Of a stretch of DNA of 64,000 bases, positions 1-64,000 are shown piece by piece. Under the pieces are notes generated by a model that was not told where the DNA came from, did no database searches, and saw only the letters and a list, made by a program, of their open reading frames with translations. Source of the stretch: Macrostomum lignano (taxonomy: Eukaryota); the NCBI GenBank assembly GCA_002269645.1, contig NIVC01002111.1, positions 7,099-71,098 on the forward strand, written 5' to 3'. How positions within the stretch are numbered: position 1 is the first letter of the stretch; the number at the start of each line of letters is the position of its first letter. The position numbers and the translations under genes were made by a program.

Positions 1-3000
1 ATACGAGCTACTTACAGGTCAGAAATCGCAGCTCATGTTCTCCCAAATCTATCTCCCAGATCCCGCTCAGTTCTATGGCCCCAATCGCGGCCTGTTCGAA
101 GACAGCGCCGTGAAGCGCCAGGCCTACAGGCTGGACGCCAGCGGCTACGGCTGCACCCTGTTCGGCGGCGAGCGGCCCCGGTTCTACACCATCGGCAAGA
201 GCACTCGCCAGCTGCTGCTGTACCCGCTGCCAACTAATCAGGTTTGTACTAACTATTAGCTTTAGCTAATTGATATAGACTTTCCGCCATAGAATACCTC
301 AGGCTCTTTGCCAAATACTCTCTACCACAGGCTCTCAGCCATAGACTCTCTACCATAGACTCTCTACCATAGACACTATACCACAGGCTCTCAGCCATAG
401 ACTCTCTACCATAGACACTATACCATAGACTCTCTACCATAGACTCTCTACCATAGACTCTCTACCATAGACACTATACCACAGGCTCTCTGCCATAGAC
501 TATGGATTCCAATTCATACCATGACGCTTATATTTTGTCAGTGTCCCACGAAACCAGCTAGAGGCATCTCCCTCTTAAATTCTGTTTGAATTTCAGCAGC
601 AAAAGACCCAAGCCTCTCTAGCGGGTATGGCGGATTTGGCCGCCAGAGAAGCCAAGGTACAATGCGTACTTTAATTCCCTTTCCTTTAAGTTCTTCTATT
701 GTCCGTTTTTTATGCGTGCGTCACACAGTTTTAACCTTAGTTTTTAAAGGCACATTTGATGTTTCTTATTTTACCCCTCCCAATTTTGTAGGAAAACTTT
801 CTTGAAGAATTAAAGAAGGTATTTTTGTTGCCAAATTTGATTTCCTTAGTAACTTTTCTTAGAGTTTGAAGTTGATTTTTTGTTATAGTTGCATTTCTCT
901 GTCGAATTCACGAAGACAAAGTTATTTAATTAAATTTTAACTTGTTTAAGTTGTTTATTTTCAAATCGGTGCCAATTTTTCAAACCAGGCCGATATTTCC
1001 GAGGAAGAAAAACGACAGGTATACCATTAGATTATTTTCACTTGCACAAGTCAGTTTTGAAAATCATATTTAGTAAAAGAAGTATTGGCTCTGATTTGAT
1101 TTCTTGATATTTTATCAAGCGTCGTCCTTTTAATAATTTAAAACTTCTTTTTAGCTTCGAATCAAACAAGCAACTCTGCAACGGACGGAGGTATTTTTAG
1201 TAGCTAGCTCTTTTCTTTATTTTTTCTTCAACGGGCTAAAATGCTGGAAATACTACTGGAAGCATGTCACAGGCGTTTTTGCTTGAAAATAAAAAAATTA
1301 CCGAGTAATAAAAATTAACGTCAACTTCACTGTAACTTTCAACAATTGTAAGACTCAGCGCAGACTATCAGTGGACATTGGTAGCAGTTTGGCGCAACAG
1401 TCGGTAAGTTACTGCCCAGAATTGAATGCCAATTCAAGCAGAACTAGATTAAAGAAAATCACGGAAAATATTAACAAACTACGAGCACTTACATGTAGTT
1501 AGATTTGTTTTAATCATTCGAACACTTCAGACGGATCTTTACTTGCAAAAAATTATTCGATCAAAAATGTGACAATAATATTATTTCAGTTCATGGAACT
1601 TTACAAGAAGGTAAAATATTTATAAAAACCGTTTAAATTTGTTTTTGTTGATTATTTTTTTAATCAGTGCATGTTTAAATTTGCGAAACTTCTTCAGTAT
1701 TGAGGCATGCCAACAATTTATTATTCAAAGTAGTTTAATGTACAGACTTTAATTCCCACGCTAACTAAAATATCTGGACGATTTCTCATTTTTTATTCGT
1801 TTAGGCTAAACGAAGAATGTCAATGTTTGTTCAGAATATGCCCCAAGTCGCCCAGGTAACTATAATATTACGTATTGAACTGCACGTTTTTGTTTGAATT
1901 AAGTGCCAAATCAATATTAGTTAAATGAATTTGCTGGGATTTAGTGTTCAAAACTCCAATTCTGTTGTTCTGAATTTATGTTTCGTGTGTGTAGTCAAGC
2001 ATAATTAAACGAAAGAAAAAATGCTTGAATCAGGTCACAAAAAAGTGTCATCACAAAGACACCATTTTTTTGTTAAAATAGTTGAGAATAACGGCGCGGA
2101 GTTAAATCTAAATGTTATAATAACGATCACAAATTGGAACTCTAAAGTACATGTACTATGTACTTTTTTGCTACATGTGTACATGTATGTACGTTTGTCA
2201 CTAAAGCTTGAAAAGTACAGCAAACTACGTCAGGTAATTTATACAATTAACCTAATTCTACAATTGAAATTACTTATAAACCACCGTACCGCATCAACGC
2301 ATCAATTAATTCTGCCACCGCGAAGATTCATCGCAAACACGAGGAAGAATCGGTAAATAAATCTAACCAGCATGCACTTTATACGCTACTTAAAGTGGCA
2401 CAGAGGAAATATCGCTGAAAAACCTATTCTGTCGTTAAAAATCATGTTTAGATAGTGGATCAACCAATAGCTGAGCAGGCTCAAGAAGGGTTCGAAAATG
2501 TTGATGAGGTTTGTTTTAATCGACCTCGAACAGCAATTATTTAGCTCTGTATACTCACGTATGTCACTCGTTTGTTTAAAACGTTTTTTAATGAAAATCA
2601 CAGGCATTTTTTCCATCTCCGCAACTGCTTTTGTTGTCACCATTTTTGTCGATCGCGTCGTATGTTTAAAAGGTTATAAAAAGGTAAAATTTAATACAAA
2701 AAATGAAAACTCGATCCACACAGAAGGGACAGCAACCTCAGCAGCACTTTGAGTCTCAGAGATCTGTGACACCCGAATCTGAGGTCGCTTTCACTAGCAG
2801 AGGCCCGAAGTCCTCCGTTGACTTGACTGCCTCTCTGCCGCAACGACAGCAGCTGCAGGGGCGTCAGGGCACGGCCCTGTGGAGGCTCAGCATGGCCAGT
2901 GTCAGCAGGCACTTGGCTCAGCAGAGAGCTATTGAGGAGGCAGTGAACCAGCGCCCAGATGAGGTGTCCCCAGCAGCCCTTACAAAATTCTGTTTTTTAG

Positions 3001-6000
3001 GCGATCCAATTTATTTACAAGCTAATTAAAGCAAAGTTAAGCTTTTATGAGCCTTGATTGCAAAACTTCAAATTTGTGGGATGGAAAAATTGTATTTAAG
3101 CAACCAATTTATAACAAATCAACGTTTTCCATAAATTTATTTACTGCAATGGACCTGCGGGCTGTTGAAATTTTGCTTATTATTTTTTTACAATCTCTTT
3201 TTCACGTGTTGCTTTTTATTTATTTAAACAAATGCATACGCAATATCACGCAAATTTTAGAAGCAACAGATTTTGATTTATCGTTTTTTTGCATTTTGAT
3301 TTGCTTGAAGTATCTTCTCAAATCGCACACGAATGTTGGATCAAATGTACTTTGATTTTAACTTTAATTTGAATTTAATGCAAAACATACTCGTACCATA
3401 ATAAAATCGCAGGACGAAGTGCCCGAAGACCAGATTTTATCTGCTAACGTTGCCGCTTCTCCCGAAGTTTTTGCCGAGGACTCCGAGATGCAGCTGAAAA
3501 TTCATCTATCTAAGCTGGCTCTGCTGGTGTACGGTTGCGACGGTCACGTGACGGTGGTCGACTTAGAGAAGAATGCAAGTGATGCTTCTTTCTGTTGACC
3601 GTTGATCTGGAAATACACAGCTGACATCCACCCACGCCTCTGCCCCTCTGCCCTAGATAACTTCTTTCCCGCTCTTGCACGTACACCAGCTGACATCCAC
3701 CCCACGCCTCTGCCCCTCTGCCCTAGATAACTTCTTTCTCGCTCTTACACGTACACCAGCTGACATCCACCCCACACCTCTGCCCCTCTGCCCTAGATAA
3801 CTTCTTTCTCGCTCTTACACGTACACCAGCTGACATCCACCCACGCCTCTGCCCCTCTGCCCTAGATAACTTCTTTCTCGCTCTTACACGTACACCAGCT
3901 GACATCCACCCCACGCCTCTGCCCCTCTGCCCTAGATAACTTCTTTTCCGCTCTTACACGTACACCAGCTGATATCCACCCACGCCTCTGCCCCTCTGCC
4001 CTAGATAACTTCTTTTCCGCTCTTAGACGTACACCAGCTGATATCCACCCACGCCTCTGCCCCTCTGCCCTAGATAACTTCTCTCCCGCTCTCACTCCGA
4101 CACCCACCTCACACCTTCATTTGGTTACTATTATAATATTTACGTGCAGGAAGTCGCCGTCAAAGTGCGCGCCCACAGCTACACCAACGGTGGTGTGCTA
4201 TCCGCAGCATTGTCGCTTGACGGCAAGTCTCTACTAACTACCGGATACGACGGCAGCCTGTGCCGATTTTCTGTCAGGTGAGAATGGTGATTGGGAAGGA
4301 AGATAGAGAAGCAAGACGGGGAAGGAAGGTGGGAAAGAAAGATAGAAAGAGCCTGTAGCCAATAGCGATCTCCGCACATCGCACCTCGTCCACGTTCGCA
4401 CCCCCGCAGGCTGCCAGACGAGCTCTCCGCCAAATTTACCGACTGGGAGCTGGCCTTCAGCTCCGACCGGATGAGTGCCATCACCGCCGAGAACGAGGCA
4501 TCGGCCGGAATGCCGACGTGGACCCAGCCGACCGAACGGCCTGAACGACGAGTTTCCGAGTGCGATGACGACGGCGCGGCGTCTGGAACGTCCTCAGCTC
4601 GCCGGGTCTCGAACTCGACCTGGCTGCACGATCAGGAGCGCGAAGCCCTGGCAGAGGAGGATAGAAAATACGCCGACAAGAAGACCGAACTGCGCGACAG
4701 GCTGTCGGAGATGCGCAGCCACATCAAAGCCATGGTGGATAAAAATGCTGCCGAATCGGACGAGTTGGAGAGGCTCGATCCGCACGAGTTCGAGCTCGAC
4801 TTGGACGAGCAGGCCAAGTTCGGTCAGGAGACTGATAGTGAGGTGCGAAAGCATTCACCGTGTTTTCAAGTTCAAAGTTCAGAGGATTTTATTTAAGGGA
4901 ATGTTTTTGATGAGGATTTCCTAGGAATACAGAGGATCCAATGGATAGGGAGTTTCTAGGAATGGGAGAATCTCATTAGGGAGATTCTAGGAATGGGATA
5001 ATCTCATTAGGGAGATTCTAGGAATGGGAGAATCTTGTTATAGATTTTCTAGGAATGGGATAATCTTGTTAGGGATTGTCTAGGAATGGGATAATCTTGT
5101 TAGGGATTTTCTAGGAATGGGATAATCTTGTTAGGGATTGTCTAGGAATGGGATAATCTTGTTAGGGATTGTCTAGGAATGGGATAATCTTGTTAGGGAT
5201 TTTCTAGGAATGGGATAATCTTGTTAGGGATTTTCTAGGAAAGGGATAATCTTGTTAGGGATTTTCTAGGAATGGGATAATCTTGTTAGGGCTTTTCTAG
5301 GAATGGGATAATCTTGTTAGGGATTTTCTAGGAATGGGATAATCTTGTTAGGGATTTTCTAGGAATGCAGGAATCTCATTAGGGCTTTTCTAGGAATGGG
5401 ATAATCTTGTTAGGGCTTTTCTAGGAATGGGATAATCTTGTTAGGGATTTTCTAGGAATGGGAGAATCTTGTTAGGGATTTTCTAGGAATGGGAGAATCT
5501 TATTAGGGATTTTCTAGGAATGGGAGAATCTTGTTAGGGATTTTATAGGAATGCGAGAATCTCATTAGGGATTTATAGGAATGGGAGAATCTTGTTATAG
5601 AGTTTCTAGGAATGTAGGAATCTTATTAGGGATTTTATAGGAATGCGAGAATCTCATTAGAGATTTTCTAGGAATTACAGAATCGCATTTGATAGGGATT
5701 TTGAAAAGACGGGAGAATCCCATCGATGTGGATTAGGGAAAATATGAATGATTATCGCATGGCTCATCCGCTAACGCAGGTGGCCAGCGTTCGCAAGCGC
5801 ATCGGGCTGGAAAATCTGGCCAAGAAGTTCCTCGCCGAGGTCATAAAACGCGAATGCTGGGAAGAAATGGAGGTCAAAGGTCGCAGTATTGTAACGTTCG
5901 GCGCCCCCCTAGAGGTGTCGAACTACCCGCTGAGACCGCAGACTAAAGAAGAGCAGGATCGACTCGATCAGGTTGCCAAGCGGCGAGTGATAGAGATTCA

Positions 6001-9000
6001 GGAGGCCAAAGACAGGCGCGAGCTGCTGGACTCTCATAGCAAGGATCAGCAGGTAACTAAAGCGTTGGAAAAATTCTAATCAACACATTTTTGTTGCTTT
6101 TTTCATATGCTCCTACTTACGAGTCAGTGACAAGCAGTATTCCGCAGGTTTTTAAAGAATTTCATATTAATTATTACTTAAAAATATGAGAAAATGATAT
6201 AGTCTCGGTTGCCTTTTGCTAATATTTTTACTTACGAGTCTAGTGACGAGTAGTATTCCTCAGACATAAAGCTAAATCGTAGTTTACATGAAATTGCTAA
6301 CAACAATTCGTTACAATTTAAAGCCGCTGGAAGATGCCATTAAAACGCGATTCAACCTGAAGGTAAACGAATCAATGATGGTTAACTTCTTAGAATTTCT
6401 TGACTGGAAGAGTACTTATAAGGCACTGTTTTTAGTTTATACTTTCTTCTCTGTGTTGCACTCAATGCATTTAATTTATATGTTTTATGGAATATTAATT
6501 TATATTTGAAGTATTTTCTATTAATTAGAAAATAAAGGCGGTTATTACTTTTCCGCACGCACTGGTGCTGTTATGGGTGCACAAAACTCTTGTCGATGTT
6601 TTCTCCTTTAGATAAAAGTGCGTTTTATACTACTTGGATTGAAAGAAACTTTATATAAATCACGATTATCATTTTCATTTATTATGTCGAGATAAAATAA
6701 TAAATAACTAATTGTCTCTAAGTATATTTTAGTGTCATAAAATTTCTTGTTTTCATATAAACGCATATAATTGCTAAATTTATTTGAAGGCCGAAGGCGC
6801 CGATGAGGAGACCCAGGAGCAGCAGGAGGAGCAGGATTCTATCACTCTTCAGGGCAGTGCAGGTGAGAATAGCTGTTATGGTTGAAGTTTAATTAATATC
6901 TGTGTTACGAGTAGCATGCATTAAAGGCACATGCGGTTCTGGTGCTTTTGGCTTTTAATAATCCGCTTTGATGCTTGTATTCTACATTGTTTACATGTAC
7001 TTTTATACTTTTGTGCCCCTGTTTTTCCACAGAAAGTCCTGGTACACCTGTTCTCCCTCAGAAGTCCCTGGCACACCTGTTCTCCCTCAGAAGTCCCTGA
7101 CATCCCTGTTCACCGCAGAAGGGTTCCTGACACACCTGTTCTCCCTCAAAAGTTCCTGACATCCCTGTTCACCGAGAAGGGTTCCTGACACACCTGTTCT
7201 CCCTCAAAAGTTCCTGACATCCCTGTTCTCCACAGAAGGGTTCCTGACACACCTGTTCTCCCTCAAAAGTTCCTGACATCCCTGTTCTCCGCAGAAGGGT
7301 TCCTGACACACCTGTTCTCCCTCAAAAGTTCCTGACATCCCTGTTCACCTCAGAAGTCCCTTGCACCACTATTGAGTCTTTTACATGCACTAATCTGCAA
7401 TCGCTTCTAGTAAACAGTTTTAATTCGCTTGAATGATAAAATAGACTAATACATGTATCAAAGATTTATCTAAATATCACACTATCAGTTTAAATTTGAA
7501 TCATATTTTTTAGTTCAATTTCTTGGGTCATGGAAATTTTCAACTTCTCAGCCTTACCTAACTGAAAACCTTTGCATCGCTTATTAAAGATTGGGGGGAG
7601 TAGCAATATTCTATATAGTGTGCATTTAAGCTTGCCAGCTTAAACAATTTTAATCAAATTTTAATGATATGAAAATATGCAAATAGCCCACTATTATTAA
7701 CAAAAATATTCAAACTCGACTCTTTTCTCGAATCGTCAACAGTCATCACAGACAAGGCTTCAGGTAAATCTATTAACAAATTAATAAGTCTGGAAAATTA
7801 ACTAACAATGCTATTTCAAGTTTTTTCTTTGCTTTAAAATGCATTTCTAAAATATTCCGGAAAATTTTGCTCGTCAGAAAAAAGATACGTTACTAAAGCC
7901 GGCAGCTCTTAATTTTTACGTTGCTTCGGAATAGCTTTACTGGATTTCTTAGAAAATTGCAAAATTCACGAGAAAAGTACATTTAAATACTAACCTGTTG
8001 TTACTAAAAAGTCGATTTTTACTATTAAAATTAACAGACCACTCAGTAAGTAAATAAGACAAGTTTTAAAGTAAAACAATTATTAGCACTTTTTAAAATG
8101 TGAAGTATAACAAATATATTTACGATAAAGTTCATTAAAACATCATCGTTAAAGAATCACCTCGTTTTGAGTGATATCAAAGCGTGTACTAACTGAAAAC
8201 CATTTATCAACGAGCTCATAGTAAATGCAAATATGCCAAAAAGTTTTCAAAAAAATACTGTATGCCATTTTATTATTGACAATGTTGCAATTAAATATTT
8301 TTCAAAATTAAACAGCTAGCAAGTTACGGACAGTGTAACACCGTTATTATTTTTTATTTTTAGCTGAGCGATTCGGCATTCTCAAGTCGATGTTTTACTC
8401 GCAGTTTGAGCTGCACTCCCGGGAGCAGAAGATTAACCAGATTGTGCTTCTGCAGGTGAGCCAATTGTTTCTAATTAGTAAATACGCCATTTATTAATAA
8501 CAGGTCTGACATTTGAAGCTTGCATTCTTACGATTTCTTTCCTAAAAATCGCACTTATGGAACTCCCTGCAGGGTCGTCGTTGGATTTCCCTAAAAATAA
8601 AATAGAATTTTCCGGATTTCATATTTGGTGTTTCAGTGAAACCAAAATATAGAGGAATATTCTGTCATTGCCGTACATTGTATATGTACGGATTTCCCTC
8701 TATTGCATTGTATATTTCCAGGATTCCACGAATTTCCCGCAGGGATTTCCCAGATCTCACACAATGATGTCCCGAATTTGGCACAGGAATTCCCCAGAAC
8801 TCACACAGGGATTTCTCAAATATTGCACAGGGATTTCCCAGAATTCACTCTGGGTTTCCCTGCATATCTCGCATTTTGTCAAACGGGACTTCCCATAGAC
8901 TCGCACAAGAAAGACTTCCCATAGACTCGCACAAGAAAGACTTCCCATAGACTCGCACAAGAAAGACTTCCCATAGACTCGCACAAGAAAGACTTCCCAG

Positions 9001-12000
9001 AATTCACACAAGGATTCTCTAGAATTCACACCAGAGATTTTTGAGATTCCACACAGATTTCCGAGAACTCACACAAGGGTTTCCCGGAATTCTCACAGGG
9101 ATTCCCCAGAACTCACACAGGGATTTCCTAAATCTTGTACAGGGATTTCCCGGAATTGCCCCAGAGATTTCCCGGAACTCACCCAGGGATTCCCCAGAAC
9201 TCACACCAGGGATTTTCGAGATCCCACAGAGTTCTCAAGACTCACACTGGTATTTTCCAAAACTAAAAAAAGTATTTCTCGGATCTTTCACTACTTTTCT
9301 CCCACTAAATTTTCCTGAGACGACACAAGCAATGAACTAAACCTCAAACTCGCCAAACAACAACTCGAACCAGGACTCGATCCGGCACATCAAGACCGGC
9401 TTCAACAAGGCATTCAACGAAGTTTACAAGAAGAAAGACCAGGAGATGAGCAAAATTCGCGAAAGAAATTTGCGAGTAAAGAAGATCGTATCGGATCTGG
9501 GCTTGCCAACCGCCGTGTCGGATCCGAACTTTGTGGCCGTTGAGAAGCCCGAGCTGCTGTTCACTGTAAGCGACAGCGAGGTCACCGTTGAGAAATACTT
9601 GACGCCGGAGCAGCAGAAGAAGCTCGTAGAGGAGCGTCAAGCTGAGGAGGATCGACTCAGACGGGAGAGGCTGGACAACTGGCGAGAGCGCGGCCTGGAC
9701 AAGATGATGGGCGGAGTGCTGGAGGTGCACAAGGAGGACGAGCTCAAGAAGGACATTCCTAAGCCGGCGTTTATGATTAATAAGCAGGTGAGGGAATTGG
9801 TGAACAGGTGCATACATCGGAGAATCTGTGAATGGGTAAACCTGTGAATGGATGAACCTCTTAAAGGGATGAACCTGTGAATGGGTGAACCTGTGAATGG
9901 GTGAACCTGTGAATGGGTGAACCTGTGAATGGGTGAACCTGTGAATGGGTGAACCTGTGAATGGGTGAACCTGTGAATGGGTGAACCTGTGAATGGGTGA
10001 ACCTGTGAATGGGTGAACCTGTGAATGGGTGAACCTGTGAATGGGTGAACCTGTGAATGGGTGAACCTGTGAATGGATAAACCTGTGAATGGGTGAACCT
10101 GTGAACGGGTGAGCCTGTGAATGGGTGAACCTGTAAATGGGTACAAACTTGTGAATGGATAAAACTGTAAATTGTTAAATCTGTGGGTGTGTGAATCTTT
10201 GAATGGATAAACTTAGGAAACCGTGAACAAGTGAATATGTGTATATGTCAATTGATCAGACTGTGAAATAGTGAACCTGTAAATGGGTGAACCTGTGAAT
10301 GGGTGGATCTGCAAATTTTTTGAATTTGTGAACGTGGATAACGTCGGTGAACCGTTGATGAATCTGTGAAAATGTACATGGATAGCCACGATCACGTCCC
10401 AATGTCCACTGCAATTCCAGGAAACCGAATGGAACGAAGAGGAACGAAAAGCAGCCGAAGACTACGAGCGCCGGGTTCGGGAACTGCAAGAGGAGCGGGA
10501 GAAATATCGCAAGCAGCTCGAGGCCGAATTGAAGAAGCTGCAGGTGAGAAATTTCTCCCTTGTAGATACGCCAAACCACTTGATGTTTGAAACAAGACTG
10601 CAGATTTGGATTATCGACTTTAGGTGATCATTGAAATCGGCTGTCTCACAGGCGCCGTTTTGGGAATCTCAAAGTTGCCGATTTGGGAGTCTCAAAGGCG
10701 CCGTTTTGCGTGTCTTAAAGGCGCCAACTTGTGTGGCTCACTGGCGCCAATTTTTAGTGTCTCAAAGGCGCCGATTTGTGTGTCTCATAAGCGCCGATTT
10801 GGGAGTATCAAAGGCGCCGATTTGGGTGTCTCAAAAAGGCGCCAATTAGGGTGTCTCAAAGGCGCCGATCTGGGAGTCTTAAAGGCGCCAATTAGGGTGT
10901 CTCAAAGGCGCCGATTTGTGTGTCTCATAAGCGCCGATTTGGGAGTATCAAAGGCGCCGATTTGGGAGTCTCAAAGGCGCCAATTAGGGTGTCTTAAAGG
11001 CGCCGATCTGTATGTCTCATAAGCGCCGATTTAGGAGTATCAAAGGCGCCGATTTGGGTGTCTTAAAGGCGCCAATTTGGATGTCTCAAAAAGGCGCCAA
11101 TTAGGGTGTTTCAAAGGCGCTAATTCGGGTGTCTCAACGGCGCTAATTTGGGTGTCTCAACGGCGCTAATTTGGGTGTCTCACAGCACCAAATCGGGTGG
11201 CTCACAAGCGCCAAATTTGTGTGCCTCTAGGCGCCGCTTTGGGTGTCTCACAGACCGCCAACTTGATTTTAAATGCTAGCTTCTCAGATGTTTTTAATTA
11301 GCGCCAAACAAGCCAGACTCACCCAAAACGCTCACCTCGCGCACCGATTTCTAGGGCCTCACGGAGGACAACATGACGTCATTCGATCAGGAGCTCCGAC
11401 AGCTGTTCTCCCTCAAAGTCAAAACCCAGTCTGCTGTGGTGCACGAGGAGCTGAAGATCTACCGGCTGAGGCTGGCGTTGCTCATCGAGGAGGAGCTCAG
11501 CGTTCGCGAGCAGGAGCTCGCTAGCCAACTGACGAAGCGTCGAGCCGCCCTAGAGGATCTCGGACCCCTGATCGACCGCAGTCGCAAGCTGGTGAAGACC
11601 CAAGACGAGCAGATTCAATACGCCAAGTCCGACAACGAGTACATGGAGAAGAACTTCTCCGCTTTCAAGAAAGAATTTCCAGAAATTTCCGCAGCAATGG
11701 CCGACACGCTGCACAAAATGTACAAGAAGAAATTGCCCCAGTAAGTGTTGCCAACACATTATTACAATATAAATAGTAGCGTTACCTTGATTATGTCTTT
11801 TTTTAACTTAAAAAAGGCGGCGGCCCCTTTGATGTCCCGACACCGTTTCTTATCTCTCATTTTTAACTTGATAACGGCGGCCACTTTGATGTTCCGACAC
11901 CGTTTCTTATCTCTCATTTTTAACTTGATAACGGCGGCCACTTTGATGTTCCGACACCGTTTCTTATTTCTCATTTTAAACTTAAAAAGGGCGGTAAGAC

Positions 12001-15000
12001 CCTTTGATGTCTCGACAATAATCCATATTTATCATTTTAACTTGTTAACAGCGGAATACTTTTGATGTCCCGACACCTCTAATCTCTTATTTTGAACTTA
12101 TAATATAATGCTAGCATTAATAGTCGATACCCAAATTCTTATCAAAACAACTCAATTTGCAGATTGAAGATCAAAGCCGGTCTGGGCGAAGCGCCGTTCA
12201 ATCCGTACGGAAACCGGCCGACAACGGCCAGCCGACAGGAGGGCGCCCGACAGGCTCTGGGACAGGTGAATAATGCTTTTTAAAGAGACGAATATTCTGA
12301 GAAACTGACAAGGTGTTTTTCTGCACTAGCTGATGAGTTCATGAATGAATAAGTTCACAGAATCATTCAGACAATTTTTGTGTGACTGTCGCGTCACCTG
12401 ACCTAGTTGACCCTAGTTCGATTACTAATTAATTTGAGGCTTACGAGGGCCAACCCCCAAGACATGCCTGATGGTTAGGAAGTCAACGGGCCACTGTACA
12501 TCCTCTATGAGCGCGTGCCTGCGTACAGTGTTGGCACACTTGAATGTGCTCAGGACTCTGCGGAATGTGCAGAATTGCATCATCAGCACTGGTTGTGGAA
12601 CGATGTCAAGTGGGATTTCGCAGCATCCAATAAGCGATATACTTTGATCAAATAACAACAGGTGCTTCGCGAGCAGGACGACGAGAGGCACATGCCGTCG
12701 GGCCTCGACGCCCACGTGTGGCAGCGCTTCTGCCAGCTGAGGCGGGCCAAGCGCGAGAAAGAGCTGCTGATTGGCGACATGACCCTGGCGCTGTCCGAGT
12801 TTCAAGCGTTTGTCACTAAGCGCGAGTCTGAGTACAACCAGATGCAGTCTGATGCAGAGAACTTGAAACTGCTGCAGGTGAGTGCTTGGTCTCCGATTAA
12901 CGCTAAAGTACCATAAGAGAGAGAGAACGAGATAGGGAGAGAGACTGAGATGAAGGGAGAGAGACTGAGATAAAGGGAGAGAGACTGAGATAAAGGAAGA
13001 GAGACTGAGATAAAGGGAGAGAGACTGAGATAAAGGGAGAGAGACTGAGATAAAGGGAGAGAGACTGAGATAAAGGGAGAGAGACTGAGATAAAGGGAGA
13101 GAGACTGAGATAAAGTTGGAGAGACTGAGATAAAGTTGGAGAGACTGAGATAAAGGGAGAGAGACTGAGATAAAGGGAGAGAGACTGAGATAAAGGGAGA
13201 GAGACTGAGATAAAGGGAGAGAGACTGAGATAAAGGGAGAGAGACTGAGATAAAGGGAGAGAGACTGAGATAAAGTTAGAGAGACTGAGATGAAGGGAGA
13301 GAGACTGAGATAAAGGGAGAGAGACTGAGATAAAGGGAGAGAGACTGAGATAAAGGGAGAGAGACTGAGATAAAGGGAGAGAGACTGAGATAAAGGGAGA
13401 GAGACTGAGATAAAGGGAGAGAGACTGAGATAAAGTTGGAGAGACTGAGATAAAGGGAGAGAGACTGAGATAAAGGGAGAGAGACTGAGATAAAGGGAGA
13501 GAGACTGAGATAAAGGGAGAGAGACTGAGATAAAGGGAGAGAGACTGAGATAAAGTTGGAGAGACTGAGATAAAGTTGGAGAGACTGAGATAAAGGGAGA
13601 GAGACTGAGATAAAGGGAGAGAGACTGAGATAAAGGGAGAGAGACTGAGATAAAGGGAGAGAGACTGAGATAAAGGGAGAGAGACTGAGATAAAGGGAGA
13701 GAGACTGAGATAAAGTTAGAGAGACTGAGATAAAGGGAGAGAGACTGAGATAAAGGGAGAGAGACTGAGATAAAGGGAGAGAGACTGAGATAAAGGGAGA
13801 GAGACTGAGATAAAGGGAGAGAGACTGAGATAAAGGGAGAGAGACTGAGATAAAGGGAGAGAGACTGAGATAAAGGTAGAGAGACTGAGATAAAGGGAGA
13901 GAGACTGAGATAAAGGGAGAGAGACTGAGATAAAGGGAGAGAGACTGAGATAAAGGGAGAGAGACTGAGATAAAGGGAGAGAGACTGAGATAAAGGGAGA
14001 GAGACTGAGATAAAGGGAGAGAGAGACTAATAAGATACAGGACAATACAATAGATACAGTATAGCTTCTTAGCCGCCAAGCAATTGTAACAATCTGCTTC
14101 CAGGAGCAACTAGCCAATCAGCGAGCCCAGTTCGCTAACAACCTGGAGGTGCAGCTGCTGGTCAAGCAGGGTCAAGTAGAGGTCGAACCGCGCGACGACT
14201 TTATCATTGACTTCGCCGACAGCCTTCTGCTCAGCCGCGGTGTAGTGGAGGACCTCAATAGCAAGATCAAGACCCTGGGCGAGGCCAAGGTGCGGTTCAT
14301 GGAGGAGGCCAAAGACTCCAAGAAGACGTTCCGCCGACTCGAATGGGAACTCCGCGGCATGCGGATGGACGCCGAGGATCTCATTAATAAGCTGCGCGAT
14401 ATTAATAGCTTCAAGATAACGCGCGAAATTCAGAGGGTAGGACTAAGATCTTAGTGCATTTAAAAGTTATACTACTTACTAGAATCTTTTGATTTGAGTA
14501 GTTACATTTGGACAGAGCAAGACTTATCTGATGTTACGCAAAATGCATATAATCCAGTCTCATTGTTAAGCTCCAGTGGCCCTTCCTGACACCAATATCC
14601 AGTGACAGTTTTATACTGCAGTGGCCCTTCCTGACACCAATTTCCAGTGACAGTTTTATACTGCAGTGGCCCTTCCTGGCACCAATATCCAGTGACAGTT
14701 TTATACTGCAGTGGCCCTTCCTGACACCAATATCCAGTGACAGTTTTATACTGCAGTGGCCCTTCCTGACACCAATATCCAGTGACAGTTTTATACTGCA
14801 GTGGGACTTCCTGACACCAATATCCAGTGACAGTTTTATACTGCAGTGGCCCTTCCTGACACCAATTTCCAGTGACAGTTTTATACTGCAGTGGCCCTTC
14901 CTGACACCAATATCCAGTGACAGTTTTATACTGCAGTGGCCCTTCCTGACACCAATTTCCAGTGACAGTTTTATACTGCAGTGGCCCTTCCTGGCACCAA

Positions 15001-16823
15001 TATCCAGTGACAGTTTTAAACTCCGGTGGCCCTTCCTGACACCAATATCCAGTGACAGTTTTATACTGCAGTGGCCCTTCCTGACACCAATATCCAGTGA
15101 CAGTTTTATACTGCAGTGGCCCTTCCTGACACCAATATCCAGTGACAGTTTTATACTGCAGTGGGACTTCCTGACACCAATATCCAGTGACAGTTTTATA
15201 CTGCAGTGGCCCTTCCTGACACCAATATCCAGTGACAGTTTTATACTGCAGTGGGACTTCCTGACACCAATATCCAGTGACAGTTTTATACTGCAGTGGC
15301 CCTTCCTGACACCAATATCCAGTGACAGTTTTATACTGCAGTGGGACTTCCTGACACCAATATCCAGTGACAGTTTTAAGCTCCAGTGGGCCTTCCTGAC
15401 ACCAATATCCAGTGACAGTTTTAAGCTCCAGTGGCCCTTCCTGACACCAATATCCAGTGACAGTTTTAAGCTCCAGTGGCCCTTCCTGACACCAATATCC
15501 AGTGACAGTTTTAAGCTCCAGTGGCCCTTCCTGACACCAATATCCAGTGACAGTTTTAAACTCCGGTGGCCCTTCCTGACACCAATATCCAGTGACAGTT
15601 TTAAACTCCGGTGGCCCTTCCTGACACCAATATCCAGTGACAGTTTTAAACTCCGGTGGCCCTTCCTGACACCAATATCCAGTGACAGTTTTAAACTCCG
15701 GTGGCCCTTCCTGACACCAATATCCAGTGACAGTTTTAAACTCCGGTGGCCCTTCCTGACATCAATATCCAGTGACATTCTTGAACTCAGTTTTAATTCA
15801 CCTATTTACACCCAATTTCAGTACCTGTCAACTGAGGATTACGACGGCTTGATCAACAGCGAGATTCAGAAGCTGGACCAGGCAATCGAGCTCATGAAAA
15901 AGGTTGGTTATAAAATATAGAGGACATTTAGCTAGACTGACTACTATTAACGAATAAAATATTTCTTCAAACCTACAAAAATATCTGCTCCAGCATCACG
16001 CCAAAATGATTGAGATGAAACAAGCCAGGCTGAAGGAACTGTCCGAGGTGAAATCTGGACAATTGGCCAAGAGAAATGAGCGACTAGACGCTGAGCTGGA
16101 GGAAATGAATGTTGGCGTTAACGAACGAGTGCACATCGAGGAGACTAATGGTGAGAGTGCATTGGGAATGCTGACGGCTGCATACGGATTCAGCTAGACT
16201 GTGTGCTAAGCTGCTATAAAGTTTTGCAGACACAGGGGAATGAGAAAGAATTGGGATACGAAGAGAAACCGAGACAAGGGAGATGAGGAAAAAGGAGAGG
16301 CGAGAGGAGATGGGACGAGAGAGAGACAGGAGGGAAGAGGAGAGAGGAGAGAGGAGAGGATAAAGGCGAGAGGAGATGGGACGAGGGAGAGACAGGAGGG
16401 AAGAGGAGAGAGGAGAGAGGAGAGGATAAAGGCGAGAGGAGATGGGACGAGAGAGAGACAGGAGGAGAGAGGAGAGGATAAAGAGGAGAGGAGGGGAGAG
16501 AGAGAGAAGAGGGGAGAGGGGAGAGAGGAGATGAGAGAGGGGAGAGGAGCTAGGAGTTAGAAATGATCCAAAGGGAGAGATTAAGAACGCATGGAGGGAG
16601 AGATCTAAACCGATATTATAAAAAGAGCAACTGGAACTGGCCGCCAATTGCAGCGGAGAAACGTGACGAGTCGCACGCCGCCAAGAAGCGGTACGAGCAG
16701 ATTCTGCAACGCCAGCGACTTGTTGACCTGGCCAAAGCTCAAGCCAAAGAGGTGGCGGTGCTCAGAGCTGAAGTTGAACGGCTTCGAATGCGCACCTTCC
16801 CCGCCCTGGTGCACACCAAGTAA
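1..16823 (+). CDS. CFAP43: Cilia- and flagella-associated protein 43 (WDR96), multi-exon, 5' end outside window
   Basis: Manual GT/GC-AG model with consistent phases. Exons: <1-241, micro-exon array 597-2508, 2724-2963, 3413-3574, 4150-4277, 4410-4842, 5780-6052, 6790-6862, 8364-8455, 9374-9787, 10421-10543, 11355-11740, 12163-12265, 12662-12877, 14104-14436, 15822-15902, 15994-16150, 16654-16823 (TAA). Peptides [62 protein letters not shown] and C-terminal [15 protein letters not shown] match CFAP43 family motifs as I recall them. AATAAA near 17022 and 17075. Confidence 0.93.
290..505. repeat. Intronic minisatellite, ~14-bp unit CCATAGACTCTCTA
   Basis: Tandem copies in the CFAP43 intron 242-596. 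Confidence 0.9.
597..2508 (+). CDS. CFAP43: Predicted array of symmetric phase-0 micro-exons of CFAP43
   Basis: AG-bounded, GT-ended, stop-free exons, all multiples of 3: 597-656 ([20 protein letters not shown]), 792-818 (ENFLEELKK), 989-1018 ([10 protein letters not shown]), 1155-1190 ([12 protein letters not shown]), 1353-1403 ([17 protein letters not shown]), 1590-1610 (FMELYKK), 1805-1855 ([17 protein letters not shown]), 1995-2033 (weaker; [13 protein letters not shown]), 2207-2233 (LEKYSKLRQ), 2326-2352 (IHRKHEEES), 2452-2508 ([19 protein letters not shown]). Confidence 0.72.
3620..4110. repeat. Intronic minisatellite, ~69-bp unit, ~7 copies
   Basis: CTGACATCCACCCACGCCTCTGCCCCTCTGCCCTAGATAACTTC... 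repeated inside intron 3575-4149. Confidence 0.95.
4920..5690. repeat. Intronic minisatellite, ~31-bp unit CTAGGAATGGGATAATCTTGTTAGGGATTTT
   Basis: Tandem copies filling intron 4843-5779. Confidence 0.95.
6324..7763 (+). CDS. CFAP43: Two further predicted symmetric micro-exons of CFAP43
   Basis: 6324-6362 is 39 nt, phase 0/0, aag|[13 protein letters not shown]|gtaaac. 7743-7763 is 21 nt, phase 1/1, caacag|(V)ITDKAS|gtaaat. Each matches the phase of its host intron. Confidence 0.6.
7030..7360. repeat. Intronic minisatellite, ~28-29-bp unit CCTGTTCTCCCTCAGAAGTCCCTGACAT
   Basis: Tandem copies with alternating variants. Confidence 0.9.
8720..9250. repeat. Degenerate intronic minisatellite (GGGATTTCCCAGAATTCACACA-like) with a nested 22-bp GACTTCCCATAGACTCGCACAAGAAA-like run
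   Basis: Visible tandem periodicity in intron 8456-9373. Confidence 0.8.
9825..10310. repeat. Intronic minisatellite, 16-bp unit GTGAATGGGTGAACCT
   Basis: Near-perfect copies 9870-10140 that decay at the edges. Confidence 0.95.
10640..11250. repeat. Intronic minisatellite, ~21-23-bp unit AAGGCGCCGATTTGGGTGTCTCA
   Basis: Tandem copies in intron 10544-11354. Confidence 0.9.
11790..12090. repeat. Intronic minisatellite, ~57-bp unit
   Basis: TTTGATGTTCCGACACCGTTTCTTATCTCTCATTTTTAACTTG... about 5 degenerate copies. Confidence 0.85.
12920..14025. repeat. Intronic minisatellite, 20-bp unit GAGAGACTGAGATAAAGGGA, ~55 copies
   Basis: Highly homogeneous tandem array. Confidence 0.97.
14565..15778. 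repeat. Intronic minisatellite, 45-bp unit, ~27 copies
   Basis: CCTTCCTGACACCAATATCCAGTGACAGTTTTATACTGCAGTGGC; explains the spurious 414-aa ORF. Confidence 0.97.
16255..16555. repeat. Purine-rich (GAGAG/AGGAG) repeat in last CFAP43 intron
   Basis: Almost purely A/G with a ~62-bp internal duplication. Confidence 0.85.
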
Positions 16824-17514
16824 TTACAATACCCGGGCAGACTATAAACAAAACTCTTATCTGACTACTGCTGTGACTCAATTTCGATTAAGTAGTATAA
16901 ATAGCGCAAGGAGTTCTGCCGGATATTTTTGTGTGTACTTATATAAATGCTGTGTTTAAGAAGATTTAATTTATGATAGCGTATAATCCAAACAAAACCA
17001 CGGTTCCTCTTTTACTATGACCAATAAACCACTATAAAAAACTATTATTATAATCTATCTTTTTTAAAGATTTAAATAAATTTCTGACACTATTTTAAAA
17101 TTTTAAAATATCACCTTAAAAGAAGTTAAAAGAAGAAGAATGACTTCAGTCATTTAAGGTTAATAACGTTCGCATTATTGGCATAATGTATACACTTAAA
17201 GCAGCGCATCTTACTTATATGTTTATAGTTGTTTATTGTTTTTCAAATACTACAATATGAAATTACTGAGATTATTAATTTATTCATAATCGCAATTTCT
17301 GTATAAACTGCAAACAGGTTAGACATTATAACCGTAACAGGAAAATAGTATAAAGTTATTAATTAAGAAAGTCAAAACAGACAATGTATGGCATGTTTAT
17401 AAAAATGTTTACCTTAATTCAAAATCAACACGTAAATATTGTATATACCAGGGTTTGGCAAAATTATTACTTAAAGGGCCAGACAGAGAGCCTAAAGCAT
17501 GACTGCCGGCCGGA

Positions 17515-18730
17515 ACAGGGGAGAGAGGAAAGGGAATTGAGAAGAGAAGGGATATAGGGGAAGGGAGAGACGAGGGAATACAAGAGAAAAGAGGAGAGGA
17601 GATAACATAGAGAGGAGAGAAGAGGAGAGGAGCGGAGAGGAGAGGAGCGGAGAGGAGAGGAGCGGAGAGGAGAGGAGCGGAGAAGAGACGAGAGGAGAGG
17701 AGAGAGGAGAGAGGAGAGGAGAGAGGAGAGAGGAGAGGAGAGAGGAGAGAGGAGAGGCAAGAGAGGCGAGAGAGAAGAGGAGAGGAGAGGAGAGGAGAGA
17801 GGAGAGAGGAGAGAGAAGAGAGGAGAAAAAAGGAGAGTAGAAGAGACGAGAGGAGAGGAGAGAGAGAGGAGAGGAGAGAGGAGAGAGGAGAGAGAAGAGA
17901 GGAGAAAAGAGGAGAGTAGAAGAGACGAGAGGAGAGGAGAGAGAGAGGAGAGGCAAGAGAGGCGAGAGAGAAGAGGAGAGGAGAGGAGAGGAGAGAGGAG
18001 AGAGGAGAGAGAAGAGAGGAGAAAAAAGGAGAGTAGAAGAGACGAGAGGAGAGGAGAGAGAGAGGAGAGGAGAGAGGAGAGAGGAGAGAGAAGAGAGGAG
18101 AAAAGAGGAGAGGAGAGGAGAGAGAGAGGAGAGGCAAGAGAGGCGAGAGAGAAGAGGAGAGGAGAGGAGAGGAGAGAGGAGAGAGGAGAGAGAAGAGAGG
18201 AGAAAAGAGGAGAGTAGAAGAGACGAGAGGAGAGGAGAGAGAGAGGAGAGGCAAGAGAGGCGAGAGAGAAGAGGAGAGGAGAGGAGAGGAGAGAGGAGAG
18301 AGGAGAGAGAAGAGAGGAGAAAAAAGGAGAGTAGAAGAGACGAGAGGAGAGGAGAGAGAGAGGAGAGGAGAGAGGAGAGAGGAGAGAGAAGAGAGGAGAA
18401 AAGAGGAGAGTAGAAGAGACGAGAGGAGAGGAGAGAGAGAGGAGAGGCAAGAGAGGCGAGAGAGAAGAGGAGAGGAGAGGAGAGGAGAGAGGAGAGAGGA
18501 GAGAGAAGAGAGGAGAAAAGAGGAGAGTAGAAGAGACGAGAGGAGAGGAGAGAGAGAGGAGAGGCAAGAGAGGCGAGAGAGAAGAGGAGAGGAGAGGAGA
18601 GGAGAGAGGAGAGAGGAGAGAGAAGAGAGGAGAAAAGAGGAGAGTAGAAGAGACGAGAGGAGAGGAGAGAGAGAGGAGAGGCAAGAGACGCGAGAGAGAA
18701 GAGGAGAGGAGAGGAGAGAAGATTAAAGAG
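17515..18730. repeat. Polypurine/polypyrimidine satellite built from GAGAG pentamers with ~83-bp higher-order units
   Basis: Recurring marker motifs GAGTAGAAGAGACG and GGCAAGAGAGGCG at regular spacing. Confidence 0.92.
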
Positions 18731-18857
18731 AGCAACGCTGAGAAGAGATGTAAACGTACGTTTAGCGGTCCGGATTGCTACTGTGAAGTTTCAAATGACC
18801 CGAGGGCCGAATAGAGAAGCTTTGCGGGCCGGAGTTTGCCGACCCCTGGTATATAAT

Positions 18858-33983: not shown

Positions 33984-42500
<8,517 letters not shown>

Positions 42501-48051: not shown

Positions 48052-48469
48052 TTTAGTTAGTTAGTTAGTTAGTCAGTCAGTTAGTTAGTTAGTTAGTTAA
48101 GGGGGTTGTAGCCTAGTGGTTAGAGCGTCGGACTCACGACTTGAAGGTCGGGGGTTCGATTCCCGAAACCCACTGGAATAATTTGTGTCCTTAAGCAAGA
48201 CACTTAATTCTGCATTGCTTCAGTTCACCCAGCTGTAAAATGGGTGCCAGCATTAGCTGGGGTAATTGAGGGGGTGTGTGGCGACCCCCCAGTACTTGGA
48301 CTGAACAGCCGTACGCAGCCTTCAGATGCGCCGCGCAATAGCTGCGGCTGAGCTGTCGGTTGCACATCTGGACATTAGGGCAGGTGTAATCAGTTATATG
48401 TAATATATATATATATATATTTGTTTGTTTGTTTGTTTGTTTGTTTGTTTGTTTGTTTGTTTGTTTGTC

Positions 48470-48508
<39 letters not shown>

Positions 48509-63932: not shown

Positions 63933-64000
63933 CTAAAACTGTCAACTCCACTTCTAGTAACCAGCATGTTGTTCAAAACGCTACTCTTATAGCATGAAAA

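What the first reader, a model, noticed from the sequence alone, without database searches (positions are those of the whole stretch)
597..2963. Micro-exon array inserted into the WD40 region of CFAP43
Seen in sequence: between the exon ending ...[10 protein letters not shown] (241) and the next conserved-looking WD segment (from 3413) lie 10-11 consecutive tiny exons of 60, 27, 30, 36, 51, 21, 51, (39), 27, 27 and 57 nt, plus a 240-nt exon. Every one is AG/GT-bounded, a multiple of 3, phase 0/0 and stop-free, and they are separated by 92-215-nt AT-rich introns. That uniformity is unlikely by chance, and the six-frame track misses them. Established: runs of symmetric micro-exons are the hallmark of schistosome micro-exon genes (MEGs), where they allow combinatorial skipping. 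Inference: this is a lineage-specific insert of ~210-220 aa, charged and probably disordered, in a conserved axonemal tether protein. It could give tissue-specific (sperm versus epidermal cilia) isoforms. I know of no MEG-like array described inside CFAP43.
Basis: partly seen in the sequence, partly recalled or inferred. Interest (0 to 1): 0.85.

Follow-up and report, generated by a model that had tools for sequence, protein, structure and literature searches.

The report
Micro-exon array in flatworm CFAP43
In the flatworm Macrostomum lignano, an intron of the cilia gene CFAP43 that is a plain intron in most other animals surveyed holds about ten tiny frame-preserving exons plus one 240-base exon, which would add a ~220-residue polar loop to the protein; the sequence signals are strong, but no transcript could be checked.

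Summary
The pattern is real and is not chance. Window 1-16,820 (+) is the 3' two-thirds of CFAP43, most likely from Macrostomum lignano. Between exon ..241 and exon 3413.. lie 11 AG/GT-bounded, phase-0, stop-free segments of 21-60 nt plus a 240-nt exon, exactly as described. They stand out from the surrounding AT-rich DNA in GC content, codon usage, pyrimidine tracts and AG|GT donors. A phase-blind exon-chaining search recovers 9-10 of the 12. Exons 792-818 and 1995-2033 are weak, and 2452-2508 is doubtful.

A profile of 38 orthologues places the 222-residue product between adjacent profile positions, and nothing in it resembles any orthologue. A direct 241->3413 splice would give a canonical protein. 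Trematode CFAP43 genes carry one symmetric exon (255 or ~336 nt) in the same phase-0 intron, so this intron is a flatworm hot spot for new exons.

The array resembles schistosome micro-exon genes (MEGs) in architecture only and fails the other MEG criteria. The sperm-versus-epidermis isoform idea does not apply, because Macrostomum sperm have no flagellum. Inclusion and alternative splicing are untested: no Macrostomum CFAP43 protein or transcript was in any searchable collection.

The parts
2..241 (+). CFAP43 exon (window starts inside it). It encodes the end of a WD40 blade, ...[12 protein letters not shown], and ends in phase 0 with donor gtttgt.
   Evidence: Aligns to positions 34-101 of a profile built from 38 orthologues, E=9e-10. 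BLASTP to P0010 residues 609-653.
242..596 (+). First intron of the block (355 nt). It contains a 14-nt minisatellite at 317-501.
597..656 (+). Micro-exon 1, 60 nt, [20 protein letters not shown].
   Evidence: tttcag|..AAG|gtacaa; GC 0.58 against 0.42; codon score +12.0 bits; recovered by the phase-blind search.
792..818 (+). Micro-exon 2, 27 nt, ENFLEELKK (weak).
   Evidence: Good splice sites (ctcccaattttgtag|, AAG|gtattt), but GC 0.26 and codon score -1.5; not recovered by the phase-blind search.
989..1018 (+). Micro-exon 3, 30 nt, [10 protein letters not shown].
   Evidence: AG/GT bounded; GC 0.47 against 0.27; +6.7 bits; recovered.
1155..1190 (+). Micro-exon 4, 36 nt, [12 protein letters not shown].
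   Evidence: ctttttag|..GAG|gtattt; GC 0.50 against 0.26; +4.3 bits; recovered.
1353..1403 (+). Micro-exon 5, 51 nt, [17 protein letters not shown]. It contains an RRLS motif.
   Evidence: AG/gtaagt; GC 0.53 against 0.31; +1.7 bits; recovered at penalty 0.
1590..1610 (+). Micro-exon 6, 21 nt, FMELYKK.
   Evidence: ttatttcag|..AAG|gtaaaa; +4.0 bits; recovered.
1805..1855 (+). Micro-exon 7, 51 nt, [17 protein letters not shown]. It contains an RRMS motif.
   Evidence: cgtttag|..CAG|gtaact; GC 0.45 against 0.26; +2.1 bits; 3' part recovered.
1995..2033 (+).
   Evidence: Acceptor gtgtgtag is fine, donor CAG|gtcaca is weak; GC 0.28; -3.2 bits; not recovered.
2207..2233 (+). Micro-exon 9, 27 nt, LEKYSKLRQ.
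   Evidence: CAG|gtaatt; GC 0.41 against 0.32; +4.1 bits; recovered.
2326..2352 (+). Micro-exon 10, 27 nt, IHRKHEEES.
   Evidence: AG/gtaaat; GC 0.44; +2.6 bits; recovered at low penalty.
2452..2508 (+). Micro-exon 11, 57 nt, [19 protein letters not shown] (boundary uncertain).
   Evidence: catgtttag|..GAG|gtttgt; GC 0.44; -4.8 bits in frame; the phase-blind search prefers 2471-2508.
2724..2963 (+). 240-nt symmetric exon, 80 aa: KGQQPQQHF...[12 protein letters not shown].
   Evidence: GC 0.60 against 0.33; +27.4 bits. Single-sequence AlphaFold2 gives residues 1-46 without structure (pLDDT 54-61) and a helix at 47-75 (block-mean pLDDT 71-91, about 90 over residues 51-70). It is the positional counterpart of the single extra exon in trematode CFAP43.
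2964..3412 (+). Last intron of the block (449 nt, GC 0.30).
3413..3574 (+). Next conserved CFAP43 exon (strand D and the following WD repeat). It starts in phase 0 and has a GC donor (AAT|gcaagt).
   Evidence: Together with the following exon it aligns to profile positions 108-191, E=4e-20. Solved CFAP43 chains align from model residue 341 = human 655.

Best explanation
Most of these segments are genuine coding exons of the CFAP43 gene of Macrostomum lignano. Together they encode a 222-residue lineage-specific expansion segment, 142 aa from 11 micro-exons and 80 aa from the 240-nt exon. The segment is polar, about 30% charged and 13.5% glutamine, and partly helical.

The segment sits in the loop between strand C of one WD40 blade (...LLLYPLP) and strand D of the next repeat. 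By approximate offset this is around residue 615-625 of human CFAP43. It lies in the second beta-propeller of the tether/tether-head protein that sits beside the I1/f inner dynein arm.

At gene level, all pieces lie in what is a single phase-0 intron in most orthologues surveyed. The array was most likely built by stepwise recruitment of new exons inside that intron. Only 0/0-symmetric pieces can survive there, and that explains the uniform phase.

What is shown and what is inferred:
- Shown: gene identity, the exact insertion site, the absence of a homologue of the insert, and statistically strong exon-like signals.
- Inferred: that the exons are spliced in, that the segment projects from the propeller rim as a flexible or helical arm, and any effect on dynein regulation (for example through its two RRxS kinase-type motifs).
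For: - Gene identity.
- Organism: a neighbouring intronless gene is 98% identical to M. lignano BOX15_Mlig007919g2, and its contig is colinear with the window at about 95.7% DNA identity.
- Exon signals: codon log-odds separate the 12 segments from all 41 chance intervals. The chain score is about 8 SD above composition-preserving shuffles. The phase-blind search recovers 9-10 of them, all phase 0. GC, T-depletion, pyrimidine tracts and AG|GT donors all discriminate.
- Insertion site: the orthologue profile aligns to exon 1 up to position 101 and resumes at position 108 in exon 3413. The linker at this site is 26-45 aa in 38 orthologues from an ichthyosporean to mammals.
- Hot spot: Opisthorchis and Echinostoma each have one symmetric phase-0 exon (255 and ~336 nt) in the homologous phase-0 intron. 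Hymenolepis and Schistocephalus proteins have 79-104-aa linkers there.
- Not duplication or intron-generating mobile elements ('introners'): the introns share no similarity.
- Composition and partial fold.
Against: - No transcript, EST or protein from any Macrostomum covering CFAP43 was in the searchable collections, so inclusion is unverified.
- A direct 241->3413 splice gives a protein that fits the orthologue profile in one piece and scores slightly better, 91.6 against 87.2 bits. The gene does not need these exons to be canonical.
- Three segments (792-818, 1995-2033, 2452-2508) have negative coding scores.
- No cross-species or homeologue conservation test could be run.
- Phase 0 is common in the rest of this gene too, roughly 7 of 10 homology-supported introns, so 13 of 13 is less striking than it looks.
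- The structural placement and any function are inference only.
Confidence: 0.7

Rival explanations
1. Combinatorial cassette array. The exons are real but are individually included or skipped, as in schistosome MEGs, giving a family of CFAP43 isoforms with loops of graded length in different ciliated cell types.
For: All 13 introns are phase 0, so any subset keeps the frame. The all-skipped product is a perfectly canonical CFAP43. Donor and acceptor strengths vary between exons. MEG-like portions inside otherwise ordinary flatworm genes have a precedent in SmVAL6.
Against: The symmetry is already explained by origin inside a phase-0 intron. The internal introns are short (92-215 nt), which in a short-intron genome favours simple constitutive removal (inference). 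The proposed sperm-versus-soma contrast is impossible because Macrostomum sperm are aflagellate. There are no splicing data at all.
Confidence: 0.25
2. There are no exons here. 242-3412 is one ordinary 3.2-kb intron, and the segments are chance open frames or decayed remnants that are never spliced in.
For: 186 AG..GT in-frame intervals exist in the region. The skip product is canonical. No homologue of the insert was found anywhere. Three segments have negative coding scores.
Against: Composition-preserving shuffles never reach the observed chain score (maximum 41.7 against 76.5). Control AT-rich DNA in the same window gives 0-10. 11 of the 14 AG|GT sites in the region coincide with the ends of coding-like frames. 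There are no stops or frame breaks in 666 nt spread over 12 pieces.
Confidence: 0.1
3. An ancestral single inserted exon, like the 255-336-nt exon of trematodes, was later split by repeated intron gain rather than assembled from new exons.
For: Trematodes have one exon at this site. There is marginal similarity between the 240-nt exon product and the Echinostoma exon product (z=3.2, p=0.008 uncorrected).
Against: Eleven gained introns would not all be expected to fall in phase 0. The introns share no sequence, so there is no sign of intron-generating mobile elements ('introners'). There is no similarity between the micro-exon product and any neodermatan insert.
Confidence: 0.1
4. The segments belong to a separate small gene nested in the CFAP43 intron on the same strand.
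For: The frame of the 240-nt exon stays open past its donor and ends at a stop just after 3026. The first micro-exon contains a Met.
Against: The first segment has a good acceptor and no upstream start context. The chain is frame-compatible with both flanking CFAP43 exons. No promoter or other gene signal was sought or seen, and no homologue exists.
Confidence: 0.03

Closest known systems
Extra exon in the same intron of trematode CFAP43 (Opisthorchis felineus TGZ61543.1; Echinostoma caproni VDP70024.1)
   Same: Same gene, same phase-0 intron after the ...LP(x)E blade end, and a symmetric 0/0 exon encoding low-complexity polar sequence. Cestode orthologues also have long linkers here.
   Different: One exon of 255 or ~336 nt rather than an array of 11 micro-exons plus one exon. 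The insert is 79-127 aa against 222 aa. No reliable sequence similarity to the M. lignano insert.
Schistosome micro-exon genes (MEGs)
   Same: A run of 10 or more very short, symmetric exons (multiples of 3, within the 6-81 bp MEG range) separated by 0.1-0.2-kb or longer introns, in a flatworm.
   Different: MEGs are small genes whose coding sequence is mostly micro-exons. They encode secreted proteins with signal peptides, restricted to schistosomes or platyhelminths, with documented alternative splicing. Here the array is about one tenth of a large, universally conserved, intracellular axonemal gene of a free-living species, and its splicing is unknown.
MEG-like portion of Schistosoma mansoni VAL-6
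   Same: A stretch of very small symmetric exons embedded in an otherwise conventional gene (PMC4350168).
   Different: VAL-6 is a secreted or tegument-associated parasite protein, and the portion is thought to come from recombination with a MEG. Nothing here suggests such an origin.
Bilaterian neural and photoreceptor microexons dependent on SRRM3/4
   Same: Tiny in-frame exons that add a few residues to surface loops. In vertebrate photoreceptors they are needed for outer-segment maintenance (PMC9303857, abstract only).
   Different: Those are usually single, 3-27 nt, deeply conserved cassette exons. From memory they carry a UGC motif before the acceptor; only 1 of 11 acceptors here has TGC in the last 15 nt. 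Here the exons form a tandem array with no conservation outside the lineage.
Tandem arrays of symmetric small exons in troponin T (5' region) and titin PEVK (from memory, not checked here)
   Same: Consecutive frame-neutral small exons encoding charged, flexible sequence whose length can be varied by splicing.
   Different: Different genes and phyla. Those arrays are repetitive or duplicated, whereas no significant internal repetition was found here.

Membership tests
CFAP43 (WDR96) orthologue | C-terminal CFAP43-type coiled coil | tested here: met
   Pfam PF25828 CC_Cfap43, E=2.8e-42, 145 bits against a cut-off of 27. The downstream exons align to human CFAP43 residues 1015-1664 of 1665, E=3.9e-95.
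CFAP43 (WDR96) orthologue | WD40 beta-propeller region upstream of the coiled coil, colinear with orthologues | tested here: met
   Model residues 341-629 align to human 655-945. A profile of 38 orthologues aligns across exon 1 and exon 3413 onward. The flanking repeat also matches canonical WD40 proteins such as LST8. The N-terminal part of the gene lies outside the window.
Schistosome-type micro-exon gene (MEG) | Run of 10-20 very short exons (6-81 bp), mostly multiples of 3 | tested here: met
   11 consecutive exons of 21-60 nt, all multiples of 3. Definition.
Schistosome-type micro-exon gene (MEG) | Most of the coding region is made of micro-exons | tested here: not met
   426 nt of micro-exons. 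More than 3.4 kb of ordinary 92-433-nt exons lie in the window alone.
Schistosome-type micro-exon gene (MEG) | Secreted product with an N-terminal signal peptide | not testable with these tools
   The 5' end of the gene is outside the window. Orthology to an axonemal protein built into doublet-microtubule structures argues against secretion.
Schistosome-type micro-exon gene (MEG) | Lineage-restricted gene without homologues outside flatworms | tested here: not met
   The gene is CFAP43, conserved from an ichthyosporean to mammals. Only the insert is lineage-specific.
Schistosome-type micro-exon gene (MEG) | Protein variation by differential micro-exon splicing | not testable with these tools
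   No Macrostomum CFAP43 transcript or protein is in the collections.
SRRM3/4-type neural microexons | Length 3-27 nt, single conserved cassette, UGC motif just upstream of the acceptor (criteria from memory) | tested here: not met
   Only 4 of 11 are 27 nt or shorter. They form a tandem array. No orthologue has the sequence. TGC is present in the last 15 intron bases of 1 of 11 acceptors.

The most novel reading that the evidence does not exclude
MEG-type gene building, meaning serial birth of symmetric micro-exons inside one intron followed by combinatorial inclusion, is not an invention of parasitic flatworms for host-exposed secreted proteins. On this reading it is a general flatworm mechanism that also remodels conserved intracellular machines. 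In M. lignano it would give CFAP43 a loop of variable length, possibly phospho-regulated through RRLS and RRMS, on the tether-head propeller next to the I1 dynein. That loop would tune ciliary beating differently in epidermal, pharyngeal, sensory and protonephridial cilia.
Probability: 0.15. Interest if true: 0.7.

Novelty: new variant of a known kind. Interest (0 to 1): 0.4.

Why it matters
If the exons are expressed, this is a clear case of a long micro-exon array inside a deeply conserved structural gene of a free-living flatworm. It bears on three questions.
- How micro-exon arrays arise. One phase-0 intron has acquired a single exon in trematodes and a dozen exons here.
- Whether MEG-like architecture predates parasitism.
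- How much extra mass the I1-dynein tether head tolerates in a propeller loop.

It is also a practical warning. Standard annotation and six-frame scans would skip all these exons and still produce a perfectly plausible CFAP43 model.

Tried and rejected
- A word-indexed protein search with the spliced 634-aa model found nothing. A search with the C-terminal 608 aa found only relatives at 45% identity or less and no Macrostomum protein.
- Exon 1 alone against solved structures gave only weak hits to generic WD40 proteins.
- BLASTP of the insert against 150 orthologues found nothing better than E=1.9.
- A global MAFFT alignment smeared the N-truncated model across the alignment and was replaced by a profile search.
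- My greedy exact-match exon mapper failed on short seeds, and one script crashed. tblastn chaining was used instead.
- The ENA contig L001 carrying the 80%-identical fragment P0011 is a compact CFAP43 gene of an unrelated eukaryote, and the part fetched does not reach the insertion site.
- Intron-versus-intron and region-versus-window BLASTN found no shared element, so there is no tandem-duplication or introner (intron-generating mobile element) origin.
- Similarity between exon products is suggestive at best. The best two-exon unit gives z=3.3, p about 0.009 before correcting for 55 comparisons.
- A window-wide scan for micro-exon chains was uninformative, because ordinary GC-rich exons dominate it.
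- Rfam found nothing in the window.
- The literature holds no paper combining CFAP43 with micro-exons, or Macrostomum with either.
- Schistosoma CFAP43 models differ from each other, but not at this site.
- The second M. lignano copy of this locus could not be fetched, because CFAP43 is not annotated on that contig.
Full report
**What is in the sequence**

The + strand of window 1-16,820 carries the 3' two-thirds of a multi-exon gene.
- The exon that runs off the left edge ends at 241 (...[10 protein letters not shown]|gtttgt).
- Each is preceded by AG and followed by GT, is a multiple of three, and is open in the frame inherited from exon ..241.
- The next exon, 3413-3574, starts in phase 0 and ends at a GC donor (AAT|gcaagt).
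- The 11 internal introns are 92-215 nt with GC 0.26-0.35. The two flanking introns are 355 and 449 nt.

**Gene and organism**

The spliced product is CFAP43.
- Pfam CC_Cfap43 matches at E=2.8e-42.
- Residues 341-629 of my model align to residues 655-945 of the human, mouse and bovine CFAP43 chains solved in axoneme structures.
- The downstream exons align to human 1015-1664 of 1665.

The organism is Macrostomum lignano or something extremely close.
- An intronless temptin/copper-monooxygenase gene at 58,272-60,086 is 98% identical to M. lignano BOX15_Mlig007919g2.
- Its GenBank contig is colinear with the window at about 95.7% DNA identity.
- This fits M. lignano being a recent hidden polyploid (PMC10468722).

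No Macrostomum CFAP43 protein or transcript-derived fragment exists in either protein collection. Expression could therefore not be checked directly.

**Is it more than chance?**

AG..GT in-frame open intervals are common: 186 occur in the 3.2-kb interval. Independent signals are strong, however.
- **Codon usage.** I trained a codon log-odds score on about 1,000 homology-supported codons of this gene against its other introns. The 12 segments score -0.25 to +0.67 bits per codon in frame, and lower in the other two frames for all but 2452-2508. The 41 chance intervals that do not overlap them average -0.79, with a maximum of -0.24.
- **Chain score.** The best non-overlapping chain scores 76.5 bits, or 44.4 without the 240-nt exon. 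Control AT-rich stretches of the same window give 0-10. Two hundred shuffles within 30-nt blocks, which preserve the GC islands, give 17+-7 with a maximum of 41.7.
- **Phase-blind search.** A dynamic-programming search that allows any exon phase and is tied only to the two flanking exons returns 597-656, 989-1018, 1155-1190, 1353-1403, 1590-1610, (1835)-1855, 2207-2233, 2326-2352, (2471)-2508 and ..-2963. Those upstream of 2452 all come back as phase 0/0; the last two come back with altered boundaries and phases. It does not return 792-818 or 1995-2033.
- **Composition and splice sites**. Micro-exon GC is 0.446 against 0.312 in the introns; 1 of 20,000 random placements reaches this. T falls from 0.37 to 0.19. 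Pyrimidine content upstream of the proposed acceptors is 0.60 against 0.49 for all other AGs (p=9e-4). Eleven of 13 donors are AG|GT, against 3 of 143 other GTs. Ten of 13 donors have a purine at +3, against 54 of 143.

I conclude that the array is a real sequence feature. About nine of the eleven micro-exons and the 240-nt exon are well supported. 792-818 has good splice sites but AT-rich codons. 1995-2033 is doubtful, and the 5' boundary of 2452-2508 is uncertain.

**Where the product sits and whether it is an insertion**

I collected 150 relatives with the one contiguous conserved exon the tool would accept.
- The 42 full-length orthologues range from Chromosphaera, Ciona, Strigamia, molluscs and a hemichordate to vertebrates, plus trematodes and cestodes.
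- In 38 of them the linker between the blade end ...LP(x)E and the next repeat (..phi-x-phi-x-P....GH..) is 26-45 aa.
- A profile built from those 38 aligns to my exon 1 (residues 18-86 = profile 34-101, E=9e-10). It resumes in exon 3413 (residues 304-402 = profile 108-191, E=4e-20).
- The 222 residues encoded by 597-2963 therefore fall between essentially adjacent profile positions.
- The hypothetical product of a direct 241->3413 splice aligns in one piece with a slightly higher score, 91.6 against 87.2 bits.
- Nothing in the insert resembles any of the 150 relatives.

The flanking sequence matches canonical WD40 repeats such as LST8. By the standard repeat layout (D-GH-A-B-C-WD), the site is the C-to-D loop between two blades. 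By offset in the hit table this is roughly human residue 615-625 (approximate, because that alignment was not printed). So 'inserted into the WD40 region' and 'lineage-specific' are both supported.

**Nature of the insert**

The insert is 222 aa, 142 from the micro-exons.
- It has 30% charged residues, 13.5% Gln, 4% aromatic residues and a net charge of +7.
- The two 51-nt exons each encode an RRxS motif, RRLS and RRMS.
As a single sequence it gives residues 1-46 without structure (pLDDT 54-61) and one helix at 47-75 (block-mean pLDDT 71-91, about 90 over residues 51-70).
- 'Charged and probably disordered' is reasonable, with some helix. For the micro-exon part this rests on composition only.

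**Comparative gene structure**

I fetched the genomic loci of two trematode orthologues.
- In Opisthorchis felineus the exon ending ...LLTYILPEEPSSR (donor AGA|gtaagt, phase 0) is followed after 7.1 kb by a separate 255-nt exon. That exon (cttag|CCAGCA...ACTGAA|gtgcga) is phase 0/0 and encodes 85 low-complexity residues. The exon homologous to window 3413-3574 follows it.
- Echinostoma caproni has one exon of about 336 nt, also 0/0, at the same place.
- Hymenolepis and Schistocephalus proteins have 104- and 79-aa linkers there, while Schistosoma has a short one.
- The trematode inserts resemble each other (z=3.7), and so do the cestode ones (z=3.1).
- The M. lignano 240-nt exon product resembles only the Echinostoma one, marginally and through Q-rich sequence (z=3.2). 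The micro-exon product resembles none.

This phase-0 intron is therefore a recurrent site of exon acquisition in flatworms. M. lignano shows the most extreme state.

**How it probably came about and works**

The introns of the array share no sequence with each other or with the rest of the window. Exon products show only weak, uncorrected similarity. Recent tandem duplication and intron-generating mobile elements ('introners') are therefore unlikely.
- An exon born within a phase-0 intron must be 0/0-symmetric to be tolerated. Stepwise exonization within the ancestral intron thus explains the uniform phase and length rule without invoking combinatorial splicing.
- Splitting of one ancestral exon by eleven intron gains would not be expected to give only phase 0.
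- Phase 0 is admittedly frequent elsewhere in this gene, but it is not universal. 4150-4277 ends in phase 2, and the homology-supported 92-nt exon 8364-8455 starts in phase 1.
- The run is also far from typical M. lignano gene structure, where mean annotated exon length is 721 nt. In this window nearly every long intron holds a minisatellite, while the short introns of the array hold none.
- Functionally, the best-supported reading is an expansion segment projecting from the rim of the second propeller of the I1-dynein tether-head protein. Any regulatory role, such as phosphorylation or partner binding, is conjecture.

MEGs are defined by the following:
- most of the coding sequence lies in very small symmetric exons (6-81 bp, typically 10-20 of them);
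- the product carries a signal peptide and is secreted at host-exposed surfaces;
- the genes are restricted to schistosomes or platyhelminths;
- isoform variation through micro-exon skipping is documented.

Only the first architectural element is met here, and only locally. The closest precedent for a MEG-like stretch in a conventional gene is SmVAL6. The proposed testis-versus-soma isoforms do not fit this organism, because Macrostomum sperm are aflagellate. CFAP43 here must serve somatic motile cilia.

**Verdict**

It overreaches on MEG kinship and on the proposed biology.

Without RNA or cross-species evidence, I put about 0.7 on most of these being true CFAP43 exons. I put about 0.25 on combinatorial inclusion, which would itself require the exons to be real. 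This is a new variant of a known kind, a symmetric micro-exon array in a flatworm gene. It is moderately interesting and easy to test with existing M. lignano RNA-seq and the M. cliftonense and M. hystrix genomes.

Noticed in passing
window 3575-4149: The intron after exon 3413-3574 appears to use a GC donor (AAT|gcaagt ... gtgcag|GAA). Only this choice keeps the frame and the orthologue alignment. The intron is filled by a 70-nt minisatellite (6.9 copies, 3614-4092).
   Followed up: partly
window 8364-8455 (and 6053-8363): A homology-supported 92-nt exon (..[31 protein letters not shown]) was missed by ORF listing. It starts in phase 1, so at least one more undetected small exon must lie in 6053-8363. 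That exon would encode the acidic linker seen in orthologues, about human 946-990.
   Followed up: partly
window 11740 / 12662: My rough downstream model has a phase conflict between the exon ending at 11740 (phase 2) and the exon I started at 12662 (frame 0). A boundary is wrong or a tiny exon is missing. This does not affect the finding.
   Followed up: no
window 4946-5675, 10642-11265, 12915-14024, 14574-15777, 28506-30440, 30972-31497, 36796-37695, 40443-41060, 50217-51251 and others: Almost every long intron or spacer holds a large, well-preserved minisatellite (units of 12-70 nt, 15-85 copies). The 11 short introns of the micro-exon array contain none.
   Followed up: partly
window 16210-18811: Directly after the CFAP43 stop (about 16820) lies a purine-rich (AGAGG)n-type satellite of more than 1 kb with higher-order periods of 117 and 196 nt. 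It accounts for the extreme GC and AT skew at 16-20 kb.
   Followed up: no
window 58272-60086: An intronless 605-aa gene fuses a temptin domain to both copper type II monooxygenase domains and begins with a hydrophobic N-terminal stretch (MTKNALIIYAALAALLSCSHA) that looks like a signal peptide (not tested). It is 98% identical to M. lignano BOX15_Mlig007919g2, and several M. lignano paralogues are 38-74% identical.
   Followed up: partly
window 48235-64000 vs L004 (NIVC01003975.1): The GenBank M. lignano contig is colinear with the window but only about 95.7% identical. The window is therefore a diverged second copy (homeologue or haplotype) or another assembly or strain. L004 has a PHO4-family transporter gene on the minus strand, and the window should carry its counterpart near 48-53 kb.
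   Followed up: partly
window 28100-33343; 34244-42540; 55133-55651: Other genes on the + strand: a PSMD5-like proteasome chaperone (Pfam Proteasom_PSMB, E=4e-7), a protein kinase (PK_Tyr_Ser-Thr C-terminal lobe) and a weak HTH_29 hit that might be a transposase remnant (not checked).
   Followed up: no
window 1353-1403 and 1805-1855: The two 51-nt micro-exons encode similar peptides (TQRRLSV.. and AKRRMSM..), each with an RRxS kinase-type motif. With the following small exon they form weakly similar two-exon units (z=3.3, p about 0.009, uncorrected). This could be an old duplication or chance.
   Followed up: partly
L002 31061-32828 (Opisthorchis felineus CFAP43): Four residues of the annotated protein (DNTQ, 786-789) map to neither flanking exon. 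This is either a 12-nt micro-exon in that intron or an annotation artefact.
   Followed up: no
L001 (ENA ERZ25878582 contig, 36 kb): A metagenome contig carries a compact CFAP43 gene with large exons from an unidentified eukaryote. It is about 50% identical to the Logan-derived protein P0010 and about 45% identical to the window gene.
   Followed up: no
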